Assembly: GCF_902713615.1 (NCBI RefSeq)
Contig: NC_052149.1
Span: 232,846,069-232,910,068 of the forward strand
Direction: 5' to 3'
Source: Scyliorhinus canicula
Taxonomy: Eukaryota
Length of the DNA stretch: 64,000 nucleotides
The number at the start of each line of letters is the position of its first letter. The stretch's first letter is position 1. A program made the translations under genes and the position numbers. The notes under the pieces were generated by a model. The model was not told the origin of the DNA. It saw only the letters and a list, made by a program, of their open reading frames with translations, and made no database searches. Shown piece after piece: positions 662-2,099 of this stretch.

Positions 662-1974
662 GGGGTAGGCGGTATGCGAATGCAGCTTGGGCTGTGTACC
701 GAGGAGGTGAGGCTGGGGAGGGGGGAGGGAGGGGGTAGGCGGTATGTGAATGCAGCTTGGGCTGTGTACCGAGGAGGTGAGGCTGGGGAGGGGGGAGGGA
801 GGGGGTAGGCGGTATGTGAATGCAGCTTGGGCTGTGTACCGAGGAGGTGAGGCTGGGGAGGGGGTAGGCGGTATGTGAATGCAGCTTGGGCTGTGTACCG
901 AGGAGGTGAGGCTGGGGAGGGGGTAGGCGGTATGTGAATGCAGCTTGGGCTGTGTACCGAGGAGGTGAGGCTGGGGAGGGGGTAGGCGGTATGTGAATGC
1001 AGGTTGGGCTGTGTACCGAGGAGGTGAGGCTGGGGAGGGGGTAGGGAGGGGGTAGGCGGTATGTGAATGCAGGTTGGGCTGTGTACCGAGGAGGTGAGGC
1101 TGGGGAGGGGGTAGGCGGTATGTGAATGCAGCTTGGGCTGTGTACCGAGGAGGTGAGGCTGGGGAGGGGGTAGGAGGGGTAGGCGGTATGTGAATGCAGC
1201 TTGGGCTGTGTACCGAGGAGGTGAGGCTGGGGAGGGGGTAGGCGGTATGTGAATGCAGCTTGGGCTGTGTACCGAGGAGGTGAGGCTGGGGAGGGGGTAG
1301 GCGGTATGTGAATGCAGCTTGGGCTGTGTACCGAGGAGGTGAGGCTGGGGAGGGGGTAGGGAGGGGGTAGGCGGTATGTGAATGCAGCTTGGGCTGTGTA
1401 CCGAGGAGGTGAGGCTGGGGAGGGGGTAGGCGGTATGTGAATGCAGCTTGGGCTGTGTACCGAGGAGGTGAGGCTGGGGAGGGGGTAGGCGGTATGTGAA
1501 TGCAGCTTGGGCTGTGTACCGAGGAGGTGAGGCTGGGGAGGGGGTAGGCGGTATGTGAATGCAGCTTGGGCTGTGTACCGAGGAGGTGAGGCTGGGGAGG
1601 GGGTAGGCGGTATGTGAATGCAGCTTGGGCTGTGTACCGAGGAGGTGAGGCTGGGATGGGGGGGGAGGGAGGGGGTAGGCGGTATGTGAATGCAGCTTGG
1701 GCTGTGTACCGAGGAGGTGAGGCTGGGGAGGGGGGTAGGCGGTATGTGAATGCAGCTTGGGCTGTGTACCGAGGAGGTGAGGCTGGGGAGGGGGTAGGCG
1801 GTATGTGAATGCAGGTTGGGCTGTGTACCGAGGAGGTGAGGCTGGGGAGGGGGTAGGCGGTATGTGAATGCAGCTTGGGCTGTGTACCGAGGAGGTGAGG
1901 CTGGGGAGGGGGTAGGGAGGGGGTAGGCGGTATGTGAATGCAGCTTGGGCTGTGTACCGAGGAGGTGAGGCTGG
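662..1974. repeat. 59-bp minisatellite (some units up to ~72 bp), 21 copies, built from the GEMIN5 exon1/intron1 junction
   Basis: Unit ggggtaggcggtatgtgaatgcagcttgggctgtgtaccgaggaggtgaggctggggag; I counted 21 occurrences of tgtgtaccgagg. Confidence 0.95.
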
Positions 1975-2099
1975 CCCCGGCTGCTGTCCAGCAGGTAGAT
2001 GCTGTTCTTGGCTCCGAAGCCCAGGACGCCCCGGGAGCTGCAGTCACAGCAGCGGCTACAATACCAGTTCGGGGAGGGAGTCAGCACTTTGCCCGGCAT
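1958..2099 (-). CDS. GEMIN5: GEMIN5 coding exon 1 (SMN complex WD40 protein); remainder of the gene lies left of the window
   Basis: Minus-strand translation MPGKVLTPSPNWYCSRCCDCSSRGVLGFGAKNSIYLLDSSRGQPHLL+G matches the human GEMIN5 N-terminus (LPPSPNWYCARCSD..GLFGFAARTSVFL). 142 nt, phase-1 donor G|GTACAC. Head-to-head with MRPL22 as in human. Confidence 0.9.

What the first reader, a model, noticed from the sequence alone, without database searches (positions are those of the whole stretch)
662..2099. GEMIN5 exon 1 splice donor tandemly amplified 21 times in a stop-free array
Seen: each 59-bp unit, read on the GEMIN5 strand, contains the last 16 nt of exon 1 plus the donor and intron start (cagcctcacctcctcg|gtacacagcc), so 20 further copies of the 5' splice site follow the real one. 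Seen: the unit has no sense-strand stop in any frame, and the GEMIN5 ATG frame stays open from 2099 to the window edge, which is probably why the ORF track omits it. Seen: donors 129 nt (GT at 1828-1827) and 438 nt (1519-1518) downstream are in frame; most others shift frame. Inference: donor choice could give wild-type protein, Pro/His-rich insertions in the first WD40 blade, or NMD substrates, with copy number tuning the output. This is notable because GEMIN5 itself acts in snRNP biogenesis (established).
Basis: partly seen in the sequence, partly recalled or inferred. Interest (0 to 1): 0.78.

Follow-up and report, generated by a model that had tools for sequence, protein, structure and literature searches.

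The report
Silent splice-donor repeat in shark GEMIN5
The first intron of this GEMIN5 gene opens with 20 extra tandem copies of the exon end plus its splice donor, but assembled transcripts from three studies join only the first donor to exon 2, so it is most likely a tolerated exon-boundary minisatellite of a kind known from human F7, IFI6 and CBS.

Summary
A 59-bp minisatellite (window 656-1974, 21 copies) starts 17 nt inside GEMIN5 exon 1 (minus strand, ATG at 2099). It repeats the exact donor CTCG|GTACAC 21 times. The exon-1 peptide matches human GEMIN5 (E 1.4e-8).

The proposed function is not supported. In three RNA-like runs from three studies, contigs of 5168, 1039 and 365 nt leave the genome exactly at 1958/1957. 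They continue with letters that read GELAGHTERV, which is GEMIN5 exon 2. No contig shows a junction at a later donor, and no joints were found. Contigs can hide rare forms, so minor or NMD-degraded use is not excluded.

The stop-free property follows from composition: 36% of shuffled units also lack stops. The RNA shows no special structure (z = 0.41). The genuine donor is very weak (4 of 9 consensus positions).

The class is known. PMC1557585 describes minisatellites whose first monomer spans an exon-intron boundary (F7, IFI6/6-16, CBS, LMNB2, PDGF). In F7 the most upstream donor is chosen.

This scan has already noted the same kind on other DNA of this genome (LAMTOR1, FPGT, PDCD11, HEI10, MHC class I).

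Verdict: a new member of a known kind, probably tolerated and not regulatory. Copy number was not verified independently.

The parts
1958..2099 (-). GEMIN5 exon 1, coding part (ATG 2099; 142 nt, so intron 1 is phase 1). The peptide ends ...SSRGQPHLL.
   Evidence: Translation. Match to human GEMIN5 PDB chains, E 1.4e-8. RNA-like contigs cover 1957-2191/2201 in X1, X9 and X4.
2100..2291 (-). 5' untranslated part of exon 1, at least this far. It holds a 30-bp repeat of 2.3 copies at 2162-2229. The transcription start is not determined.
   Evidence: Contigs of the RNA-like runs reach 2289 (X1) and 2291 (X4). TRF.
1956..1957 (-). Genuine 5' splice site: GT of TCG|GTACAC. This is the donor joined to exon 2 in assembled transcripts. 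It is weak: 4 of 9 matches to CAG|GTAAGT.
   Evidence: Loose ends at 1957 in X1, X9 and X4, with identical continuation that reads G-E-L-A-G-H-T-E-R-V in frame. U1 duplex -4.3 against -14.6 kcal/mol for the consensus.
656..1974 (-). 59-bp minisatellite of 21 monomers with spacings of 59-72 bp (12 of 59; eight of 60-72) and 8 monomer types. The first monomer spans the exon 1/intron 1 boundary. There is a higher-order period of 188 bp.
   Evidence: TRF. Unit table. 89-nt closed-cycle contigs (59+30) in X1, X9 and X2.
698..1887 (-). 20 pseudo-donors identical to the genuine one. GT lies at 1887, 1828, 1769, 1709, 1637, 1578, 1519, 1460, 1401, 1331, 1272, 1213, 1145, 1086, 1016, 957, 898, 839, 769 and 699 (first base). 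Five are in frame: +129, +438, +744, +1059 and +1188.
   Evidence: No junction at 1887, 1828 or 1769 in any of the four runs.
273..655 (-). Further G-rich repeats on the + strand in intron 1: a 24-bp array of 11 copies (273-534) and GGGGAGG-type low complexity (516-665). The minisatellite ends in this low-complexity stretch.
   Evidence: TRF. Canonical G-quadruplex motifs lie only on the + strand.

Best explanation
This is an exon-boundary (splice-donor) minisatellite. A stretch made of the last 17 nt of GEMIN5 exon 1 plus the first ~42 nt of intron 1 was duplicated in tandem. It was then expanded, partly in 188-bp blocks, by slippage or unequal exchange in a G-rich, repeat-prone intron start.

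Shown: the spliceosome joins the most upstream donor (exon end 1958) to exon 2.

Inferred: the 20 identical downstream donors lie inside the intron and are removed with it. The array is therefore tolerated and not regulatory. The first site is chosen by position (5'-to-3' order, nearest the capped first exon), as shown experimentally for the human F7 IVS7 minisatellite. It cannot be chosen by strength, because all 21 sites are identical from -17 to about +42.
For: Anatomy.

Junction: contigs of 5168 nt (X1), 1039 nt (X9) and 365 nt (X4), from studies P1, P5 and P4, lie on 1957-2191/2201. They then run on into the same non-window letters, which continue the GEMIN5 frame as GELAGHTERV. The 5168-nt contig has exon 1 at its very end, as expected for a near full-length GEMIN5 mRNA.

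No alternative junctions: there were no loose ends at 1887, 1828 or 1769 and no joints in any run. The three transcript contigs pass 1974 without a break, so no strong branch from a unit into exon 2 exists in those assemblies.

No retro-copy seen: the DNA-like run X2 lacks the joined form.

No masking structure: z = 0.41.

[quoted passage not shown] LMNB2 (100-bp units) and PDGF (81-bp units) also use only the genuine site (PMC1557585).

Background: minisatellites make up 10.4% of this window, so an array born on a donor is not surprising.
Against: Only assembled contigs could be laid, not raw reads. Contigs drop rare variants, so absence of other junctions is weak evidence.

The nearest pseudo-donor (+70) shifts the frame. 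Its products would be cleared by NMD and under-represented.

IFI6 and CBS do use their first two pseudo-sites.

The genuine donor is about as weak as a random GT: 31% of all GT on that strand pair with U1 as well or better. Its reliable use needs some help that I have not identified.

Array letters are present in the RNA-like runs (89-nt cycle contig). I read this as unspliced RNA, but it was not proven.
Confidence: 0.78

Rival explanations
1. One reading: several of the 21 donors are used. This gives wild-type protein, Pro-rich insertions (43 aa for donor 3) or frame-shifted NMD substrates, and copy number tunes GEMIN5 output.
For: All donors are identical. Six of the 21 keep the frame, and no stop lies in the array. 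IFI6/6-16 and CBS use their two most proximal pseudo-sites. Contigs cannot exclude minor or NMD-degraded forms.
Against: Three independent transcript assemblies show only the 1958 junction, with no loose ends or joints at donors 2-4. The first pseudo-site is 70 nt away and out of frame. In the literature, the arrays with longer units (F7 37 bp, PDGF 81 bp, LMNB2 100 bp) keep their pseudo-sites silent. An insertion would fall right after the conserved N-terminal stretch (PSPNWYC...) of the WD40 domain, where it is likely harmful (inference).
Confidence: 0.1
2. The array is functional without being spliced at. The 20 extra U1-binding sites, or the C-rich motifs (CCCCCTCCCC) in each unit, would act as an intronic platform that helps the very weak genuine donor or protects the long first intron from premature cleavage. 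That would make this snRNP-assembly gene sensitive to U1 supply.
For: The genuine donor has only 4 of 9 consensus matches and a U1 duplex of -4.3 kcal/mol, yet it is the site used. The repeats begin immediately downstream. Everything else rests on general knowledge of intronic enhancers and U1 telescripting (inference).
Against: There is no direct evidence. The same kind of array sits in unrelated genes of this genome according to earlier notes of this scan. That fits a neutral by-product better than a GEMIN5-specific device. No conservation data are available.
Confidence: 0.05
3. Assembly artefact: the array is shorter, or its copy number is wrong, or it varies strongly between individuals.
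For: In the DNA-like run X2 the closed-cycle contig has depth 13 against 2.8-4.0 on the unique flanks. That is about 4 copies' worth, where the assembly predicts a mean 31-mer multiplicity of 15.75. No listed contig bridges unique exon 1 into the first monomer by 31 nt on both sides. An N gap lies 360 bp upstream of the ATG.
Against: An 89-nt closed cycle (59+30) requires perfect tandem units in X1, X9 and X2. In X4, five array pieces of multiplicity 3, 12, 18, 3 and 17 have depths of 12, 47.7, 72.5, 8.8 and 49.1. That is a steady 2.9-4.0 per assembly copy and fits the assembled make-up. The units carry 17 nt of exon 1, so they arose at this boundary. Contig depth is a poor measure, and G-rich DNA is often under-read.
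Confidence: 0.07

Closest known systems
Human F7 intron 7 (IVS7) 37-bp VNTR (Borensztajn et al. 2006, PMC1557585)
   Same: The first monomer of the minisatellite spans the exon-intron boundary. The genuine donor is followed by identical pseudo-sites, and only the most upstream site is seen in transcripts.
   Different: F7 has 5-9 monomers of 37 bp carrying 4 nt of exon, behind an internal exon. Here there are 21 monomers of 59-72 bp carrying 17 nt of exon, behind the first exon. The donor here (TCG|GTACAC) is much weaker than F7's TGG|GTGGGT (U1 duplex -4.3 against -10.7 kcal/mol). F7's silence and the functionality of its pseudo-sites were shown with 50 constructs; here there is only transcript-contig evidence.
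Human IFI6 (6-16) intron 2 minisatellite and CBS IVS13 minisatellite (as summarised in PMC1557585)
   Same: The splice donor is reiterated many times (25 pseudo-sites in 6-16; 15-20 monomers in CBS) by a boundary-spanning minisatellite.
   Different: [quoted passage not shown] Here no such junction is seen, and the first pseudo-site is 70 nt away and out of frame.
Human LMNB2 (100-bp monomers, 10-15 copies) and PDGF intron 4 (81-bp monomers, 16-18 copies) (PMC1557585)
   Same: These are long-unit boundary minisatellites in which only the genuine donor is used. Unit size and copy number are similar to this case.
   Different: Different genes and lineage. I did not read the primary papers.
Other splice-donor minisatellites noted by this scan in the same genome (LAMTOR1, FPGT, PDCD11, HEI10, MHC class I)
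   Same: Same architecture, with the exon end plus donor repeated at the intron start. For PDCD11 and MHC-I the notes report that only the first donor is joined.
   Different: These are unverified AI notes on other loci, with copy numbers from 3 to about 270. I did not re-test them.

Membership tests
Exon-boundary (splice-donor) minisatellite, F7 IVS7 type | Head-to-tail array of monomers of minisatellite size (about 10-100 bp) | tested here: met
   Period 59, 21.0 copies, at 656-1974. There are 8 monomer types, and 10 of 20 monomers are identical.
Exon-boundary (splice-donor) minisatellite, F7 IVS7 type | The first monomer spans the exon-intron junction, so the exact donor sequence is reiterated in the intron | tested here: met
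   Transcript contigs place the exon end at 1958. The array reaches 1974, which is 17 nt into the exon. There are 21 exact CTCG|GTACAC motifs.
Exon-boundary (splice-donor) minisatellite, F7 IVS7 type | The most upstream (genuine) donor is the one used | tested here: met
   Loose ends at 1957 in X1, X9 and X4 (three studies), with a continuation that reads GELAGHTERV.
Exon-boundary (splice-donor) minisatellite, F7 IVS7 type | Downstream pseudo-sites are silent in normal transcripts | tested here: inconclusive
   There was no junction or joint at donors 2-4 in four runs. Only contigs were available, and these show presence, not absence.
Exon-boundary (splice-donor) minisatellite, F7 IVS7 type | Pseudo-sites are competent when the upstream sites are inactivated | not testable with these tools
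   This needs minigene mutagenesis as in PMC1557585.
Exon-boundary (splice-donor) minisatellite, F7 IVS7 type | Copy-number polymorphism (VNTR) | tested here: inconclusive
   Depth in X2 suggests about 4 copies' worth, whereas depth in X4 is proportional to the assembled multiplicities. Contig depth is unreliable.
IFI6-type expressed minisatellite (several donors used, in-frame insertions) | Proximal pseudo-donors are used constitutively and the unit length keeps the frame | tested here: not met
   Units of 59, 60, 68, 70 and 72 nt are mostly not multiples of 3, and the first pseudo-site at +70 shifts the frame. No such junction appears in the contigs.
GEMIN5 orthologue | N-terminal WD40 sequence similar to GEMIN5 | tested here: met
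   Exon-1 peptide against human Gem-associated protein 5 chains: E 1.4e-8, residues 4-38. The rest of the gene lies outside the window and was not searched.
U12-type (minor spliceosome) intron | 5' splice site |RTATCCTT | tested here: not met
   The intron starts GTACACAG.

The most novel reading that the evidence does not exclude
The 20 reiterated weak donors are not inert. In this reading they recruit U1 snRNP (or C-rich-motif binding proteins) next to a near-random-strength genuine donor, or they are spliced at a low level into NMD substrates. Either way, output of GEMIN5, itself an snRNP-assembly factor, would depend on U1 snRNP supply and on array length, forming a feedback loop.
Probability: 0.05. 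Interest if true: 0.7.

Novelty: new member of a known kind. Interest (0 to 1): 0.27.

Why it matters
The array is a natural test of how a spliceosome picks one of 21 identical 5' splice sites. It sits in a cartilaginous fish, behind a first exon, and the site has only four consensus matches. If raw-read data confirm exclusive use of the first site, the position-based (5'-to-3') selection rule shown for human F7 would extend beyond mammals and to very weak donors.

In practice, such arrays can mislead gene predictors, because the open frame runs through the whole array. They are also likely length-polymorphic markers.

The GEMIN5 connection to snRNP biogenesis is a coincidence unless shown otherwise. 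According to earlier notes of this scan, the same kind of array occurs in several unrelated genes of this genome.

Tried and rejected
1. Stop-free array as a sign of coding or selection: rejected. The sense strand is 53% C, and 36% of shuffles of the unit lack all stop triplets.

2. RNA structure masking the pseudo-sites: rejected. 400 nt of pre-mRNA fold no better than shuffles (z = 0.41).

3. U12-type intron as an explanation for the odd donor: rejected by sequence.

4. Dispersed repeat family: rejected within the window. The unit occurs only in the array.

5. Neighbouring genes: Pfam on ten long ORFs gave only a reverse transcriptase (19124-20395, minus strand), an ALKBH8_N-like match and repeat-driven noise. 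No neighbouring gene was identified.

6. Earlier notes near this place and under the word GEMIN5: nothing found.

7. Searches not run:
- The two large protein searches.
- Conservation in related sharks. No collection offered here holds vertebrate genomes, and all 20 runs holding the stretch are the same organism.
- A second reads call on the whole array. The cap is one call.
- The exon-2 letters. They have no reference, so I only translated them for display and sent them to no search.
- The joined exon 1 + exon 2 reading.

9. The species name 'small-spotted catshark' comes only from earlier notes of this scan. I did not verify it.

Full report
**What is there**

The + strand of window 656-1974 is one tandem array of period 59, with 21.0 copies and 86% matches. 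Higher-order periods of 118 and 188 bp score better. Read on the minus strand, an ATG at 2099 opens a frame that stays open to window base 1.

Its first 47 codons (2099-1958) match the N-terminus of human Gem-associated protein 5 in the Protein Data Bank. The match covers residues 4-38 with E 1.4e-8 and includes the PSPNWYC stretch.

The motif CTCG|GTACAC occurs exactly 21 times on that strand. The first copy ends the unique exon sequence at 1958, and 20 more follow at spacings of 59-72 nt. The 32 nt that follow each GT occur 21 times with at most one mismatch. They occur nowhere else in the 64 kb, and 0 are expected by chance.

Unique exon 1 and the monomers share 17 nt (ccagcctcacctcctcg), so the array boundary lies inside the exon. 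Ten of 20 monomers are one identical 59-mer. The others differ by C-tract insertions (60, 68, 70 or 72 nt) or by one G-to-C change.

So are +744, +1059 and +1188, and the remaining 15 shift the frame. The coding part of exon 1 is 142 nt, so the intron is phase 1.

No TAA, TAG or TGA occurs anywhere in the array's sense strand. On that strand no stop occurs in any frame between 2046 and 229. This is compositional: the sense strand is 53% C, and 36% of random shuffles of the monomer are also stop-free.

The ATG frame is missing from the ORF list because ORFs that run off the source are not listed.

**Which donor is used**

Twenty public runs from seven studies, all of one organism, hold the stretch 1700-2300. 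I laid four of them on 1760-2455, which covers exon 1 and the first four donors.

Three RNA-like runs from three different studies each contain a contig that lies on 1957-2191 or 1957-2201 and then leaves the window sequence:
- X1: 5168 nt, with exon 1 at the very end of the contig.
- X9: 1039 nt.
- X4: 365 nt.

The continuation is the same in all three runs. Read on the sense strand and in the exon-1 frame, it gives ...QPHLL-G-E-L-A-G-H-T-E-R-V. From my memory of the human protein (GELVGHTERV) this is the next piece of GEMIN5. I did not search those letters, because they have no reference.

So the exon ends at 1958, the intron starts with GT at 1957-1956, and the first donor is the one joined to exon 2. 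There were no loose ends at 1887, 1828 or 1769 and no joints at all. The three transcript contigs run through the array boundary at 1974 without a break, which argues against an abundant branch from a monomer into exon 2.

The DNA-like run X2 does not hold the joined form, so nothing points to a retro-copy.

All four runs are assembled contigs. The tool itself warns that contigs show presence, not absence. Rare products, or products cleared by NMD (the nearest pseudo-donor at +70 is out of frame), cannot be excluded.

**Array letters in the runs**

X1, X9 and X2 each hold an 89-nt contig. That is 59 + 30, the size of a closed cycle of 31-mers, and it requires perfect tandem monomers.

In X4 the array is split into five pieces whose 31-mer multiplicities in the assembly are 3, 12, 18, 3 and 17. 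Their depths are 12, 47.7, 72.5, 8.8 and 49.1. That is a steady 2.9-4.0 per assembled copy and fits the assembled make-up.

In X1 and X9 the per-copy depth is about 4% and 1.4% of the exon contig's depth. I read this as unspliced RNA.

In X2 the cycle has depth 13 against 2.8-4.0 on the unique flanks. That is about four copies' worth instead of about 16. It could be a shorter allele, poor reading of G-rich DNA, or an over-long assembly.

Depth of contigs is a weak measure, and no listed contig bridges unique exon 1 into the first monomer. The copy number of 21 therefore rests on the assembly alone.

**The donor is weak**

TCG|GTACAC matches the consensus CAG|GTAAGT at 4 of 9 positions. Its best duplex with the U1 5' end is -4.3 kcal/mol, against -14.6 for the consensus and -10.7 for an F7-like site. 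Of all 3045 GT dinucleotides on that strand of the window, 31% pair as well or better.

It is not a U12-type site. All 21 sites are identical from -17 to about +42, so strength cannot explain the choice. Only position and the unique exon sequence upstream of -17 differ.

The pre-mRNA has no special fold (z = 0.41).

**Other visible features**

Nineteen of the 20 repeated monomers carry a pyrimidine tract of 8 nt or more plus CAG 13 nt before the GT; in the remaining one, at 1652, an A interrupts the tract. This is a 3'-splice-site-like motif. A 13-nt exon is implausible, and no such joint was seen.

The + strand, which is the template strand for GEMIN5, carries 16 canonical G-quadruplex motifs between 260 and 1923, and the other strand carries none. 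Six of them lie in the array: five in the 70-nt monomers, where each insertion completes a four-run motif, and one in the 72-nt monomer. From general knowledge, G-rich minisatellites are unstable, which offers a route to expansion.

Ten arrays of 150 bp or more cover 10.4% of the window.

**Comparison with what is known**

Borensztajn et al. 2006 (PMC1557585) describe exactly this class, minisatellites whose first monomer spans an exon-intron boundary.
- In human F7 IVS7 (37 bp, 5-9 copies) the identical pseudo-sites are functional but silent. [quoted passage not shown]
- In 6-16/IFI6 (25 pseudo-sites) and CBS, the two nearest pseudo-sites are also used.
- In LMNB2 (100 bp) and PDGF (81 bp), only the genuine site is used.

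The GEMIN5 array meets the structural criteria and the criterion of first-site use. Silence of the pseudo-sites is inconclusive, and their competence is not testable here.

It differs from F7 in several ways. It sits behind a first exon, it carries 17 nt of exon, its units are longer, it has more copies than F7, and its donor is much weaker.

Earlier notes of this scan report the same architecture in other genes of the same genome: LAMTOR1, FPGT, PDCD11, HEI10 and MHC class I. For two of these the notes say only the first donor is joined. They name the organism as the small-spotted catshark. I did not re-test these notes or the species name. I found the F7 literature independently, before reading them.

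**Verdict**

The gene and the splice-site anatomy are right.

The functional reading (donor choice and copy number tuning GEMIN5) is not supported by the transcript evidence available.

The most likely reading (0.78) is a tolerated boundary minisatellite whose extra donors are removed with the intron. It is a new member of a known kind and of modest interest. The main open points are low-level use of pseudo-donors, the true copy number, and how so weak a donor is recognised.

Noticed in passing
window 1817-1907 against 1963-2302 (run X2): In the DNA-like run the collapsed monomer contig has depth 13, against 2.8-4.0 on the unique flanks. The assembly predicts about 16-fold. This could be a shorter allele, a bias against G-rich DNA, or an over-long assembly.
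   Followed up: partly
window 2162-2229: A 30-bp repeat (2.3 copies) lies in the 5' untranslated region. RNA-like contigs there are short and up to about 10 times deeper than the exon contig (482 against 43.5 in X1). One-base deletions are seen at 2201 (X1, X9) and 2128 (X4). These may reflect shared words with another transcript, or polymorphism.
   Followed up: no
window 713-1901: Nineteen of the 20 repeated monomers carry a pyrimidine tract of 8 nt or more plus CAG 13 nt upstream of the GT (in the remaining one, at 1652, an A interrupts the tract). The array therefore also reiterates a 3'-splice-site-like motif. No joint using it was seen.
   Followed up: partly
window 260-1923, + strand: Sixteen canonical G-quadruplex motifs lie on the template strand of GEMIN5 and none on the sense strand. 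Six lie in the array. In the 70-nt monomers the insertion creates a four-run motif.
   Followed up: partly
window 4341-6364: A large AT-rich 42-bp satellite (48 copies, 89% matches) lies about 2.2 kb upstream of the GEMIN5 start codon.
   Followed up: no
window 6961-7362 and 1-120: A 31-bp array (13 copies) has a unit containing GTGCTAACCACTG. This resembles the tRNA-like, SINE-type sequence at window 1-120, so the minisatellite may derive from a SINE.
   Followed up: no
window 37854-39407: A 126-bp array (13 copies) produces long ORFs on both strands and spurious Pfam hits (CdiA_C_tRNase, DUF7348) with no valid stretch.
   Followed up: partly
window 19124-20395 (minus strand) and 32239-32913 (minus strand): A reverse-transcriptase ORF (RVT_1, E 2e-31) and an ORF with an ALKBH8_N-like match (E 2e-12). 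Both are likely retroelement remnants upstream of GEMIN5.
   Followed up: partly
window 8662-8753 (minus strand): ARAGORN calls a 92-nt tRNA-Phe with anticodon AAA. The length and anticodon are unusual, so this is probably a SINE or pseudo-tRNA.
   Followed up: no
window 2456-2636: An N gap of 181 bases lies inside CT-rich repeats about 360 bp upstream of the ATG. The promoter region is therefore incomplete.
   Followed up: no
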